Origin: Glycera tridactyla
Taxonomy: Eukaryota
Assembly (NCBI GenBank): GCA_965644265.1
Contig: OZ286468.1
Span: 20,522,001 to 20,586,000, forward strand
Reading direction: 5' to 3'
DNA length: 64,000 nt
Under the pieces are notes generated by a model. It ran no database searches, had not been told where the DNA came from, and saw only the letters and a list, made by a program, of their open reading frames with translations. Within the stretch, counting starts at the first letter, position 1. Every line of letters starts with the position of its first letter. Shown one piece after another: positions 2,430 through 63,519 of this stretch. Position numbers and translations under genes: made by a program.

Positions 2430-2469
2430 ATGGCAGCAGAAGTGATAGACAGCAAAGTAGGCCATGCAG
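2430..2469 (+). CDS. gene A exon 1 (MAAEVIDSKVGHA)
   Basis: First ATG after an in-frame TAA; strong CAG|GTGAGT donor; phase 1 matches exon 2. Confidence 0.7.
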
Positions 2470-5400
2470 GTGAGTTTCATCATTATATCTAATGAGAACT
2501 TAATATTCTTTCGCTTATATCTTCATCCGCACTCTCCTCACCCCAAGCCTTAAATACACACAGGTTCAAATCTAGTTGTACAATCGAACCAGCCCAGAAG
2601 TCCCCTCATGTGTCAAAGATGACTGTCCACAACATCAACTCATACAATATGCATGCTACAGGGGCTATCACACTATAAGACTACATTTCGTCATTGAATA
2701 CCGTATCCTTGAGCCTATTGAGGGATACATTGTTCTAAAACTGCAAAACATAGCATCTACAGACCTGCATTTGAAGTAGATTTTCGATGATCCATCTGAT
2801 TGCTTCAAGTAGGAAATATTATGATAATCATTTGTTTCTACCACTCTCTTGCAGATGGTGGAAAACATTCAGCTCCGGATGTTGGAATAAGATGGCACTT
2901 TAATCGACTGCTGGCTAACACCCACATGCATGGTCTACCACATGCTTATCATGCCCGAAGTCCTCAACGGAAAGCTTTCTGGGCTCTGCTCTTTCTTGGT
3001 GGCCTTGGTAGGTTATCACCGAGATGATATATGTAGTTTCACATCTCGTTTTCTGTCATAACTGTCAAAAGTCATTGATGTACATACTATGGTTTGAAGC
3101 TGTCTCTCCATTCCAGGGATGTGTTCGTTCATGGTGATAGCCAACTTTCAGATGTACATCACTCGACCAGTAAAGACGACCATCCAGATCCATGATGATT
3201 CTGAACTACCATTCCCTGCAATCACCTTCTGTAATCACAATCCTGCTAGATTGAGTGTCGTTAGGAAGTTTGCTGAGAAAAGGGAGCCATGGAGAGCCAT
3301 ATTGGTATGTATGACTTTTTCGCACACTCTCACTCATACATCATGTTGAAAGTGACTCGGTGAGTCGGCTCATACTCATGCTCAGGTGAGTCCCCGTGGC
3401 GATATTCACGATTCGTGAGCATAGACATGGAGATATATTGCAAATTTCCAAGAGGGGCAATGCTGTACTTCTATTGTGCTATGTACACCGTGCTGGAGGC
3501 TTTAATGCTTACAATACAAATTTATTTGATTTATTATTCGAAGCAGTGTTATATGTGTGTGAGCATCAATTTCTCAGTCTAATTTGATTTATGTGCCTTT
3601 TTGGTCCCATTTTTGAGTAACTATGTGCCTCGCATGTGCCCTTTTGCACTGTAAGATCGTCCATAGATGATGAGCCTTGGACTTTGCTCCCGTGTAGGCC
3701 CCTAAAGCAGTAGCTACTTTTGAAACAAAGGGAACAAGTGGGTCACAATTATTGAAGGGTTTTCAAATCTCAGCATGAAGCTTGACTCGTAATCAAAGTA
3801 TCCCAGCATATGTCCTATATAGAATCCAAAACTAAGTCAAGAATTGACCTCCTAAAAATAATTCGCCTTGTTAATTCACAATATCTAGCCATACATTTGA
3901 TACAGACCTTGATCCTACCTATATTCTCGCATGGTTGTGTCATGTACGATGACGGTAGCAGCACCTCGTCAGAGAAACTTGATCATTGGCTTGAAACAGC
4001 ATTGAGAATTGCACTGTATGAAGGGAAACGTACATCTGCAGTTCCTCTGTGTATCCTTATAGCAAGAAATCATGGGGTGTTGTCCTGACAAGTTATACAC
4101 CACGAGGTGTGTATTGTCAGTATAATTCACGAGGCCGAAGGCCGAGTGAATTATAGTCGCAATACACTCTGAGTGGTGTATTACTGTCAGGACAACACTC
4201 CATGGTTTCTTGCTTATATACCACGATTTAGCATGCTACTTCAAGGTGGTAAGCTCATCTGAGTGAAATTCAGTTCGTTTGTTGATCACATTTATCCCAC
4301 CATGAACCCCATTTATGGAACACATGAGAGTTACACTGAATAACAAACATGAACATATAGGCAGAATTCCACACAAAACGAGCTTGGAATCTGAAAGTAT
4401 TCTCGTCAAACAAGGCAGATCATGAGAAATCCAACACTGTGAAATCTGTTAGTAAGCTCTACTCAATATAGTTGAGTCATCTGAACTTGACAAGTTATGA
4501 TAACTTGAAATTTCTTAGTACAGATGACAAATAAGGTTTTGTAAGTTAAGTCAACTGATGCAACATAAGTTTATACATGTCCTGCCGCCAAATCAAGGCC
4601 AGATGTTTATGCTTCACTCCTGCATCTACCATGGATACAGGGTGTGTGTGTGAGAGGGGGTTGGGTACATCCTGTCTCCTTCCCCTGCTGGTCAAGCATC
4701 TAATCCACCACTTATAATCTGCGCTACTATGCCAAACTGCTGTAACAGACATTCATCAAGTGACTTGTCTCATCATCCTATTTAATCCAGCCAAGTGGGT
4801 AATTATCTACGCATTCTCAATTTGATGCATCAATATTGAGAGAGCTGTCTCTTTGACATTGATTGTTTGGTGTTTGTGTTATCATGTGTGCCAGTTGATT
4901 CATATTTGAATCACAGCCATGACCTAGATTCTGATTTGGGCAGGTAAGTTACATCTTATGCATTGGTTGACTCTAGTACAGTCACACCTGTCTACAGAGA
5001 CCATCTGTGGTTACATTGAGAAATGGCCCATGAAGGCAGGCAGTCTTTGTACAGAAGTTGCTTGATGTGAAAATGCTATCATGATTATAGTTCTTGGTGA
5101 CCCTTATAGGCAGGTGGTCTCTGTGTAGAGGTGGTCTCTCAGACAGGTATGTAGCTCAATTTCATGTGCGGGTGATCAGTGTTTGTGATAGCATACCTTG
5201 CATCCCAGCTTTTCAGGTCTCAAACATTATGCGAGTGTTTATATTCCACAGGGATGTTGCTTCTAGAAAGGTGAGACCTGTATACAAAGACCATACTTGA
5301 TCACATCAGAACTTGGTCTCAGAAAGGTCATCGAGGATAGGCTGTTTACTGTATTGATATACACTGATTGAGCTTGAACTGCAGTTTATTGACTCTTATC

Positions 5401-61805: not shown

Positions 61806-63482
61806 GACTTATATGGCTTGTAGCAAGAATCATCTTGTATGATAATGACCAATAATAGTTTAGATCTATATTCACTGTTTTGGCCTTAAAGGGTTAAAAA
61901 TCAGCATCTTTTAGGAATTAGTCAGAGTGAGATTAGAGTTGTATGGATGGATGGAGGATGGATGGATGGATGGATATATAATCTCAGAAGCCATACAAGA
62001 ATCATCATAAGCTGTACTGGAATACCAAAAGCTTTCAGAAAATATATAGTCTGCATGCTCTGCCACCCCCCCCCTCCCATGTCTATATTTTTGGGATAAT
62101 TCCTATCTTACGATGACTATGATATTCGCCATGAATTTTCAGAACACTATACTAGTTTCAAAAATCACCGAATGTATATTCATGCACCCTCTCTCTATTG
62201 AAAAGAATAGCAAGTGCTCTTATGGTGTTTTGTACTACTTTAGTTGGGAATGTACCAAATTCTTTTTCGTTTCAGTCAATAAAACGTGAATGATATGACG
62301 CTCTATGCTTCCTCAGAAAAAAAATCACAAAACACAAGAATGTCTGTAATCGATTGCACGCTTGCTAAGTGCAGCTAGTGACATTACGTTCCAATGTTTT
62401 CATACCAATACAAATATAGGCATAACAGCAGGACCTCAACGCTAGGAATGAATGACAGCATAATTTTTTCAGTGCTTGCCGCAAAGAAAGACCCAGGGCC
62501 ATCAGTCTTAGACCTCCTTGCCCCTGACTCGCAATGTATATGATTAGCTGGTCGAAGTCACTGTATACTATATCGTGACGCCCATGCAACAAGTATGGGT
62601 GTAATCATCATGGGTTACCAATGACAGGTCAATTACATCATATTCACACACTATACGCGTGACTTCAGGGCAGCAACGAAGCACGAGAGTCACTGATCAT
62701 CCTCCCAAGACGAGATGGTCTTATAGACATGCTGTGTTTGAAGCATTGCTTTTCTCATTTAAATGGGAAATTGCGAACATTTTGTGGAAATCCGATACAT
62801 TCAAGATGATGGTCATAGATTAGCAATCATGCTATATCGATTTACCACAATGCCAAACAAAAAGCAACCTCATCTCAGCATACATACGTATTTCAGACAC
62901 ATGCCGGCGCAAGAATGAAGGGGTGAAATTCAACTACAAGCAAGAGGCTGCGTCCCTTCCAGATCACAACGTGACACCTGGCTGTAATGAAATTCGTCTG
63001 GAACAAAACCATAGAAACAATATTACAAATGAATATTCACAGAGGAGATGGCACATATGTGAAACCCATCACATTTCTTGTCACCAAACATTCGGGAAAA
63101 TGCATATGAGCCTGTTTTGCATCGATTGGATCTGAAATGTGAAAGAGACAGCGAAAAAAAATTACCCATTCTCGATGATCGAGAATGTACTCCAAGAAGT
63201 GGTTTTGATGTCACAGGTGAGAGCCAGCAATTGATCTGCCAGGCTGTGTGACCAATATTAGATGTGCGGTGTAGTCCGCTTCACTCACACAGGCATATGC
63301 TATCATATGCAAAACAAAATCAGCAGGGATTAGTTTACCCATAATCACTATGCACTGCTGTTAATGTCTACCATTGTTTGCCATCGTCACATAGATCGGC
63401 AGCATCATATATCCTGATGAATTACCATCCCTGATGGATCATTCAGAGAGGCCGAGTTGTTCATGGAGATACATGGTACGAG

Positions 63483-63519
63483 ATGTCCTCTGAAGGAGCA
63501 CAGGGTACACAAAGCACAG
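63483..63519 (+). CDS. Probable exon 1 of a further DEG/ENaC paralog (E; MSSEGAQGTQST)
   Basis: gagATG context, phase-1 CAG|gtgaga donor; lies at the homologous position of an ~1-kb block shared with gene C exon 1. Downstream exons would be outside the window. Confidence 0.55.

What the first reader, a model, noticed from the sequence alone, without database searches (positions are those of the whole stretch)
2430..63519. Tandem DEG/ENaC array in active birth-and-death evolution
Seen: two spliceable 13-exon channel genes with identical intron phases, three decayed copies and the first exon of another copy, all within 64 kb. Known: DEG/ENaC subunits assemble as trimers, and invertebrate lineage-specific expansions include peptide-gated, proton-sensitive and mechanosensory channels. 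Inference: A, C and E may form a heteromeric sensory channel of a lineage-specific clade. Their short finger regions (exons 3-4), the usual ligand-recognition area, are the most divergent part.
Basis: partly seen in the sequence, partly recalled or inferred. Interest (0 to 1): 0.7.

Follow-up and report, generated by a model that had tools for sequence, protein, structure and literature searches.

The report
Tandem sodium-channel gene family array
This stretch of an invertebrate (probably annelid) chromosome carries neighbouring duplicated genes for DEG/ENaC-type sodium channel subunits plus broken leftovers of further copies, which is an ordinary lineage-specific gene-family expansion rather than a new kind of system.

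Summary
Gene A (2430-23895) and gene C (36221-59000) are 13-exon DEG/ENaC (Pfam ASC) genes on the + strand with identical intron phases. 63483-63519 is exon 1 of a third gene, E, whose other 12 exons lie 6.7-17.8 kb past the window and are intact.

Caveats:
- All five gaps inside A are intronic.
- A's intron 12 has a GC donor, shared with two paralogues.
- C's exon 6 runs into an unlisted gap (44570-44731), so its last ~4 bases and donor are unseen.

Decay: B (29362-30257) has exons 1-3 only, no ATG and two stops. Small scraps lie at 28.06-28.81 kb and, inverted, at 59.85-59.91 kb.

The array is larger than the window: five intact genes (V, Y, A, C, E) over 274 kb. A, C and E form one clade, with dN/dS 0.26-0.29 and at most 34% identity to any full-length relative retrieved. 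They are therefore lineage-specific paralogues, not orthologues of characterised subfamilies.

An intact orphan exon 1-4 cassette (Z) 7.4 kb upstream of A may be an alternative 5' module. The scan earlier noted other DEG/ENaC genes elsewhere in this genome, not this array.

The parts
2430..2469 (+). Gene A exon 1 (ATG plus 13 codons, ends in phase 1)
   Evidence: ATG, donor CAG|gtgagt and phase are conserved in Z, V and Y.
2855..3007 (+). A exon 2 (HG motif, start of TM1)
   Evidence: Pfam ASC positions 2-32. Splice sites.
3117..3304 (+). A exon 3 (TM1 end, FPAITFCN)
   Evidence: Pfam ASC 32-94, E = 7e-10. PDB ASIC5 hit.
10384..10553 (+). A exon 4 (finger; most divergent large exon)
   Evidence: It sits on a 2.1-kb contig piece between two gaps.
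12652..12758 (+). A exon 5 (GNCFTFN)
   Evidence: Aligns to human ASIC1 residues 189-213.
14069..14232 (+). A exon 6 (palm)
   Evidence: Pfam ASC 206-260, E = 1.4e-8. PDB ASIC1/2 hits.
15192..15314 (+). A exon 7
   Evidence: Homologous boundaries in A, C and E.
16381..16492 (+). A exon 8 (thumb, Cys-rich)
   Evidence: Pfam ASC 298-331. Boundary corrected.
17340..17418 (+). A exon 9
   Evidence: Smith-Waterman score 57 against a background of 24.
17729..17786 (+). A exon 10
21394..21485 (+). A exon 11
21747..21822 (+). A exon 12, followed by a GC donor (GGG|gcaagt)
   Evidence: The GC donor is conserved in paralogues Y and V. The donor region is repeated in the 94-bp tandem repeat at 21832-22079.
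23740..23895 (+). A exon 13 (TM2 with GLS filter, stop TAA)
   Evidence: Pfam ASC 429-455. PDB FaNaC1 hit, E = 1.4e-7.
28056..28130 (+). Exon-12-like scrap
   Evidence: blastn 75% over 76 nt to C exon 12. It lies in a segment homologous to the region upstream of Z.
28782..28814 (+). Exon-10-like scrap
   Evidence: blastn 88% over 33 nt. Exon profile E about 0.01.
29362..29401 (+). B exon-1-like, no ATG, TGA at 29368
29803..29955 (+). B exon-2-like, TAG at 29841 replacing the conserved Trp, HG changed to NG at 29877
30070..30257 (+). B exon-3-like. No exons 4-13 follow.
36221..36269 (+). Gene C exon 1
37881..38036 (+). C exon 2
39026..39210 (+). C exon 3
   Evidence: Pfam ASC E = 4.8e-11.
40022..40200 (+). 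C exon 4 (finger)
42405..42511 (+). C exon 5
44410..44569 (+). C exon 6, cut by the assembly gap 44570-44731 (about 4 nt and the donor unseen)
45465..45587 (+). C exon 7
46230..46356 (+). C exon 8
47798..47876 (+). C exon 9
48624..48681 (+). C exon 10
50246..50337 (+). C exon 11, followed by a 7.9-kb intron holding retroelement remains
   Evidence: RVT_1 at 51843-52628 (-) and 55075-55392 (+).
58282..58357 (+). C exon 12
58815..59000 (+). C exon 13 (TM2, stop TAG). The acceptor is 10 nt after gap 58435-58804.
59851..59907 (-). Inverted exon-2-like scrap (weaker similarity across 59806-59964)
   Evidence: Exon-2 profile E = 3e-5. blastn 80-84% to C/E exon 2.
63483..63519 (+). Exon 1 of gene E. 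Exons 2-13 lie at window-equivalent 70243-81770, outside the window.

Best explanation
The window holds the middle of a head-to-tail array of five paralogous DEG/ENaC channel genes, V, Y, A, C and E, spread over 274 kb on one strand. Tandem duplication made the array.

A and C lie whole in the window, and E contributes its first exon. Each encodes a subunit of about 505-526 aa with every family hallmark:
- a cytoplasmic HG motif;
- TM1;
- FPAxTFCN;
- GNCFxFN;
- 14 ectodomain cysteines;
- a small residue (Ser) at the degenerin position;
- TM2 with a G-L-S filter.

Shown: gene structure, intact reading frames, purifying selection, monophyly of A/C/E, and truncated or dead copies between the genes.

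Inferred from family knowledge: the products assemble as trimers into amiloride-type Na+-permeable channels opened by an extracellular stimulus. The paralogues most likely differ in ligand or gating properties through the fast-evolving finger (exon 4) and the post-thumb linker (exons 9-11).

No evidence bears on which stimulus gates them, or on whether A, C and E co-assemble.
For: - Pfam ASC hits are colinear across exons.
- The 13-exon models have GT-AG (and one conserved GC-AG) introns and identical phases in A, C, E, V and Y.
- Motifs and 14 ectodomain Cys are present.
- TM2 and palm exons align to solved ASIC, ENaC and FaNaC chains.
- dN/dS is 0.29 (A-C), 0.26 (A-E) and 0.28 (C-E, dS 0.40).
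- The A/C/E clade has 100% support.
- Array map.
- Dead copy B and the scraps.
Against: - There is no transcript evidence.
- The end of C exon 6 and its donor lie in an assembly gap, so C's intactness is not fully shown.
- A depends on a GC donor, although that donor is conserved.
- Exon 1 is short and predicted by conservation only. An in-frame ATG at 2821 would give an alternative start.
- Lineage-specific changes in A's exons 2-3 are 19 nonsynonymous against 4 synonymous. The counts are small, but this hints at relaxed or positive selection on A's own 5' cassette.
Confidence: 0.8

Rival explanations
1. A has two alternative 5' modules. The intact orphan cassette Z holds exons 1-4 with its own ATG and upstream region, at window-equivalent -5035 to -1815. 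Under this reading Z is spliced to A exon 5, skipping A's own exons 1-4. That would give two subunits differing in the N-terminus, TM1 and finger, as in vertebrate ASIC1a/1b. B would then be a dead cassette of the same kind. This adds to the best explanation rather than replacing it.
For: - Z keeps its ATG, 183 codons without a stop, three acceptors and four donors, and the same phases.
- The Z + A exon 5-13 hybrid is an open 505-codon frame.
- Z lineage changes are 18 N to 11 S, omega about 0.48, p = 0.046 against neutrality.
- Neutral survival of such a cassette at 0.11 substitutions per site is about 1%.
- B, of similar age, has died.
- The exon 4/5 junction aligns to about residue 181/182 of human ASIC1, and the ASIC1a-specific part is residues 1-185 (PMC2151504).
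- An earlier scan note reports twin TM1 exons in another DEG/ENaC gene of this genome.
Against: - No RNA data are available.
- Z may simply be the 5' half of a gene that lost its 3' half recently, so most of its branch would have been under selection as a whole gene.
- The parsimony counts assume a star tree of A, Z and B.
- Z lies outside the window.
Confidence: 0.3
2. A and/or C are recently inactivated unprocessed pseudogenes that still look intact. The array would then be mostly dying rather than functional.
For: - Dead fragments sit beside them.
- C has a 7.9-kb retroelement-laden intron and an exon end hidden in a gap.
- A has a GC donor and an excess of nonsynonymous lineage changes in exons 2-3.
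- No expression evidence exists.
Against: - Reading frames of 505 and about 526 codons are open.
- All 24 visible splice-site pairs are intact.
- dN/dS is 0.26-0.29 across the pairs.
- The GC donor is conserved in three paralogues, so it is old and functional.
Confidence: 0.12
3. Part of the apparent array is an assembly artefact, from haplotype copies or wrongly joined contig pieces across the eight gaps.
For: Eight N gaps lie in 64 kb. A's exons sit on four contig pieces and C's on three.
Against: - The copies are far too different for haplotypes. C and E are 80% identical in amino acids with dS 0.40, and A and C are 56% identical.
- The pieces are colinear, on one strand, and phylogenetically consistent.
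- The flanking 190 kb with V and Y has no gaps at all.
Confidence: 0.04

Closest known systems
Uncharacterised spiralian and ambulacrarian DEG/ENaC proteins: Gigantopelta aegis XP_041354351, Lamellibrachia satsuma KAI0238727/KAI0207077, Lingula anatina XP_013398048, Saccoglossus XP_006813344, Glandiceps XP_077988550
   Same: They are the nearest sequences found. Full-length identity is 30-34%, and 36-39% over about 200 aa for the annelid fragment. They are of the same length class. The Gigantopelta and Lamellibrachia proteins form the sister group in the tree, with SH-aLRT 92, not starred.
   Different: None is a close orthologue. A/C/E sit on a long private stem of 1.1 substitutions per site. 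None of these relatives has a tested function.
Vertebrate acid-sensing ion channels (ASIC1-4) and BASIC/ASIC5
   Same: Shared features are the two-TM topology, the HG motif, 14 ectodomain Cys, a short finger (about 98 residues from FPA to GNC) and a GxS filter. ASIC1/2 chains are the best PDB hits for exons 5 and 6, and ASIC5 is the best for exon 3.
   Different: A/C/E are not in the clade holding bird ASIC4 and amphioxus ASIC2-like. The post-TM1 His needed for proton gating aligns to Val in A; this uses the ungapped ranges, and the role of that His is from memory. Proton gating is untested.
ASIC1a/ASIC1b and ASIC2a/2b alternative 5' exons
   Same: ASIC1a and 1b differ in the first third, including TM1 (residues 1-185 of ASIC1a; PMC2151504). 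Here an intact duplicate of exons 1-4 (183 codons) lies upstream of gene A. The exon 4/5 junction aligns within about four residues of the ASIC1 boundary.
   Different: Use of Z in transcripts is not shown. The cassette here is four exons, not one. The ASIC1 residues around the junction were placed from memory, so whether the intron position is the same is not established.
FaNaC / WaNaC / MGIC peptide-gated channels of annelids and molluscs
   Same: They occur in the same broad animal group. The TM2 exon's best solved match is Malacoceros FaNaC1, at 34.8 bits. They show lineage-specific diversification (PMC9234716, PMC9822975).
   Different: Ectodomain exons match FaNaC chains poorly: 15-16 bits for exons 3 and 6 and none for exon 5. 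No FaNaC or WaNaC sequence could be placed in the tree.
Lineage-specific DEG/ENaC expansions in general (30 C. elegans degenerins, cnidarian NeNaCs and others)
   Same: PMC9822975 describes extensive lineage-specific diversification from a few ancestral genes. This genome also has more than 100 intronless ASC genes.
   Different: This is just one more local case. The only unusual elements are the orphan 5' cassettes.

Membership tests
DEG/ENaC superfamily (Pfam PF00858, ASC) | Sequence match to the ASC profile, colinear along the protein | tested here: met
   Exon-wise hits fall at profile positions 2-32, 32-94, about 108-173, 206-260, 298-331 and 429-455. Four exons are individually above the 23.6-bit cut-off.
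DEG/ENaC superfamily (Pfam PF00858, ASC) | Two transmembrane helices flanking a large Cys-rich ectodomain | tested here: met
   TM1 (exons 2-3) and TM2 (exon 13) align to the TM regions of solved ASIC, ENaC and FaNaC chains. There are 14-15 Cys between FPA and TM2.
DEG/ENaC superfamily (Pfam PF00858, ASC) | N-terminal HG gating motif and TM2 G/S-x-S selectivity filter | tested here: met
   The HG motif is present as THMHGLPH or THTHGLPH, and the filter as GGQLGLWIGLS, in A, C and E.
DEG/ENaC superfamily (Pfam PF00858, ASC) | Trimeric, amiloride-sensitive, Na+-permeable channel | not testable with these tools
   This needs expression and electrophysiology. The joined protein could not be folded, because a spliced model has no reference.
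ASIC subfamily | Placement inside the ASIC clade | tested here: not met
   In the 36-row tree, A/C/E are separate from the starred clade of bird ASIC4 and amphioxus ASIC2-like. Sampling of ASICs was thin.
ASIC subfamily | Proton-gating determinants (post-TM1 His) | tested here: inconclusive
   The ungapped phmmer range, query 14-57 against chicken ASIC1 63-106, puts Val opposite His74. The importance of that His is recalled from memory, and no function was tested.
FaNaC/WaNaC peptide-gated subfamily | Closer sequence affinity to FaNaC than to other subfamilies across the ectodomain | tested here: not met
   FaNaC chains score 15-16 bits on exons 3 and 6, against 24-27 bits for ASIC chains, and give no hit on exon 5. 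Only the TM2 exon favours FaNaC1.
Alternative 5'-cassette gene (ASIC1a/1b type) | Two intact, phase-compatible 5' cassettes upstream of shared exons | tested here: met
   Z exons 1-4 are intact and frame-compatible with A exon 5.
Alternative 5'-cassette gene (ASIC1a/1b type) | Transcripts joining each cassette to the shared exons | not testable with these tools

The most novel reading that the evidence does not exclude
Gene A is a two-headed channel gene. An intact duplicated block of exons 1-4 (Z), with its own start codon and upstream region, is alternatively spliced to A's exons 5-13. One locus would then yield two subunits with different N-terminus, TM1 and finger. That would be a protostome counterpart of ASIC1a/1b, at nearly the same junction. 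B would be a dead example of the same module in front of gene C.
Probability: 0.3. Interest if true: 0.5.

Novelty: new member of a known kind. Interest (0 to 1): 0.3.

Why it matters
It adds a well-resolved example of local birth and death in the DEG/ENaC family. The array holds five intact genes, two orphan 5' cassettes and several scraps, with clean exon maps. The genome is also extremely rich in this family, with more than 100 intronless copies.

Practical value:
- The three subunits A, C and E are 56-80% identical, with divergence concentrated in the finger and post-thumb linker. That makes them a natural chimera series for finding what gates an uncharacterised spiralian channel clade.
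- The Z cassette offers a testable case of N-terminal module swapping outside vertebrates.

None of this would surprise a specialist.

Tried and rejected
1. A 14th 'exon' between exons 10 and 11 (C 49874-49998, E 79706-79816) was rejected. It is similar only between the young pair C and E, has a 14-nt indel and a TAA in the better frame, is absent from A, and is not needed for the frame.
2. I first took the in-frame ATG at 2821 as the start. The conserved polypyrimidine-CAG acceptor at 2855 and a conserved upstream ATG-plus-donor mini-exon in all copies favour the 13-exon model.
3. I considered reading the inverted fragment at 59.6-59.96 kb as a processed, intron-less copy. The similarity seemed to run about 10 codons past the exon 2/3 junction. 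However, a profile of exons 3+4 does not hit it, and a genomic control scored the same, so this is not supported.
5. The word search with A exon 3 found nothing. With an intronless paralogue it gave nothing at E <= 1e-20. No species or phylum assignment came from these.
6. The mitochondrial COX1 on contig C207 has 12 TGA codons, so only stretches of at most 68 aa are stop-free. That is too short for the length-limited word search. 'Probable annelid' rests on an earlier scan note and on the Lamellibrachia fragment being the closest relative.
7. The top two hits of the big search, Phytophthora proteins of 4132 and 1597 aa, are repetitive chance matches.
8. Joined spliced proteins were used only inside local scripts. 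They were not sent to any search, fold or cluster tool, so there is no structure prediction and no exact look-up of the full proteins.
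Full report
**What the window is.** It is G000:C28:20522001-20586000 of a 2.04-Gb eukaryotic assembly. It has about 40% GC and eight N runs. Two of these, 44570-44731 and 58435-58804, were not in the list added by the scan's program. An earlier scan note calls the organism a probable annelid. I could not verify this. The closest relative of the genes studied is a Lamellibrachia (annelid) fragment, and the mitochondrial COX1 uses TGA as a sense codon.

**Finding the genes.** Exon-sized ORFs on the + strand match Pfam ASC (PF00858). 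I compared stop-to-stop translations all against all, within the window and then with 10 kb upstream and 30 kb downstream added. This gave colinear sets of conserved blocks. Nucleotide alignments of the blocks showed shared splice sites. The resulting models have 13 coding exons.

- Gene A spans 2430-23895 and encodes 505 aa.
- Gene C spans 36221-59000 and encodes about 526 aa.
- Gene E has exon 1 at 63483-63519 and exons 2-13 at window-equivalent 70243-81770. It encodes 508 aa and has no gaps.

Intron phases are identical in all three: 1,1,0,2,1,0,0,1,2,0,2,0. Exon-wise Pfam hits are colinear with the ASC profile.

**Gaps, tested first as instructed.** All five gaps within A are intronic, and the nearest is 200 nt from an exon.

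- A's exons lie on four contig pieces. Each piece is most similar to the same paralogues, V and Y.
- C's three pieces are all about 85% identical to E, so nothing suggests a chimeric join.
- C exon 6 ends at the edge of gap 44570. 160 of the expected 164 nt are visible, and the last codon or so and the donor are not.
- Gap 58435-58804 sits in C intron 12 and stops 10 nt before the exon 13 acceptor.
- I read C through with X at that break and did not fill anything.

**Splice oddities.**

- A's intron 12 has a GC donor (GGG|gcaagt). The same GC donor is present in paralogues Y and V, while C and E have GT, so it is an old GC-AG intron and not a fresh lesion.
- A 94-bp tandem repeat (21832-22079, 2.6 copies, 98% matches) re-copies the end of exon 12 with that donor.
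- A 146-bp tandem duplication (45193-45488) re-copies the first 24 nt of C exon 7.

**Family features.** A, C and E have all of the following:

- the HG motif;
- FPAxTFCN and GNCFxFN;
- 14-15 ectodomain Cys;
- LLSDQGGQLGLWIGLS in TM2, which gives a small Ser at the degenerin position and a G-L-S filter.

Solved-structure searches exon by exon give these best matches:

- exon 3: ASIC5;
- exons 5 and 6: ASIC1/2;
- exon 13: Malacoceros FaNaC1;
- exon 8: none.

This gives no clear subfamily.

**Selection and divergence.**

| Pair | aa identity | dN/dS |
|---|---|---|
| A-C | 56% | 0.29 |
| A-E | 55% | 0.26 |
| C-E | 80% | 0.28 (dS 0.40) |

- Exon 4 (finger) is the most divergent large exon, at 30-42% identity between A and C/E.
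- Exons 9-11 are similar, at 37-47%.
- Exon 3 is not especially divergent, at 60-62%.

**Relatives.** One exhaustive search with A exon 6 found nothing above 62% identity, and the best of those were short fragments. The best full-length relatives are 30-34% identical to my models (local blastp). They come from a gastropod, a brachiopod and hemichordates, and all carry automatic names. In a 36-row tree, A, C and E form a 100%-supported clade on a long stem. That clade is sister, without strong support, to Gigantopelta and Lamellibrachia proteins. It is apart from the bird ASIC4 / amphioxus clade and from this genome's own intronless ASC genes. Characterised FaNaC, ENaC, HyNaC and PPK sequences could not be brought into the tree. 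Lineage-specific diversification of this family is well documented (PMC9822975).

**The array beyond the window.** Genome searches with exons 3, 6 and 13, and 190 kb fetched upstream, show two more colinear genes.

- V lies at -192250 to -108418.
- Y lies at -100651 to -15819.

Both have 13 exons, open frames, the same phases and very long introns.

**Partial copies.**

- Z lies just upstream of the window, at -5035 to -1815. It is an intact type-I cassette of exons 1-4, with its ATG and all splice sites, and nothing after it until gene A.
- B (29362-30257) is a type-I cassette of exons 1-3. It has no ATG, carries TGA at 29368 and TAG at 29841 on the conserved Trp, and has HG changed to NG.
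- Profile searches for every exon found only two further significant remnants. One is exon-10-like at 28782-28814, and the other is an inverted exon-2-like piece at 59851-59907.
- blastn adds an exon-12-like piece at 28056-28130. It sits in a segment homologous to the region upstream of Z.

**The Z question.** The evidence for a functional cassette is as follows.

- Z plus A exons 5-13 is an open 505-codon frame.
- Z-specific changes are 18 nonsynonymous to 11 synonymous, while A's own exons 2-3 show 19 to 4.
- A neutral cassette would stay intact about 1% of the time at Z's branch length.
- The exon 4/5 junction aligns to about residue 181/182 of human ASIC1, close to the 185-residue variable part of ASIC1a/1b (PMC2151504).

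This makes an alternative 5' module plausible. A recently truncated gene explains the same facts, and there are no RNA data. I give the alternative-module reading 0.3.

**What could not be done.** Joined spliced proteins have no reference. They were therefore used only in local scripts and not sent to search, cluster or folding tools, and no structure was predicted.

**Verdict.** The 'birth-and-death array of a lineage-specific clade' reading is supported. The heteromer and sensory ideas are open. The finger-divergence claim is half right. This is a new member of a known kind of thing, of modest interest. The orphan intact 5' cassette is the one lead worth following.

Noticed in passing
L017 (G000:C28:20512001-20522000), window-equivalent -5035 to -1815: Z is an intact orphan cassette of exons 1-4 of the same family, with its own ATG and a conserved upstream region. 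It lies 7.4 kb before gene A and may be an alternative 5' module.
   Followed up: partly
window 21832-22079: A 94-bp tandem repeat (2.6 copies, 98% matches) re-copies the last bases of A exon 12 together with its GC donor. This creates two extra copies of that donor downstream.
   Followed up: partly
window 45193-45488: A 146-bp tandem duplication (89% matches) overlaps the acceptor and first 24 nt of C exon 7. A decoy copy of the exon start lies at 45319-45342.
   Followed up: no
window 50338-58281: C intron 11 is 7.9 kb long. It holds reverse-transcriptase fragments on both strands (51843-52628 on -, 55075-55392 on +) and a 123-bp repeat at 53295-53551.
   Followed up: partly
window 1146-1746, 43268-44060, 33842-34490, 12451-12581: Satellite-like arrays: a 46-bp unit x13 upstream of A; a 49-bp unit x16 in C intron 5; a 331-bp unit x2 right after gap 33612-33830; and (TACC)n right after gap 12253-12449. 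Several gaps abut repeats.
   Followed up: no
whole genome G000: There are more than 100 single-exon (intronless) ASC/DEG-ENaC ORFs of about 500 aa, often in local clusters (for example C32, C34, C18). One of them has no word-search relative at E <= 1e-20. Many further multi-exon relatives lie on C28, C29, C40, C13, C11 and C17.
   Followed up: partly
G000:C28, window-equivalent -187937 to -187857 (L022): Gene V has an extra partial exon-3-like (TM1) piece about 190 bp upstream of its exon 3. This recalls the twin-TM1-exon gene noted elsewhere in this genome.
   Followed up: no
L040 (G000:C207:338-4678): Contig C207 is mitochondrial. Its COX1 has 12 in-frame TGA codons, as in invertebrate mitochondrial codes.
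   Followed up: no
window 49874-49998 and L019-equivalent 79706-79816: An intronic block is conserved between C and E and mimics a phase-0 cassette exon. It has a 14-nt indel and a stop in C, and I judged it not to be an exon.
   Followed up: yes
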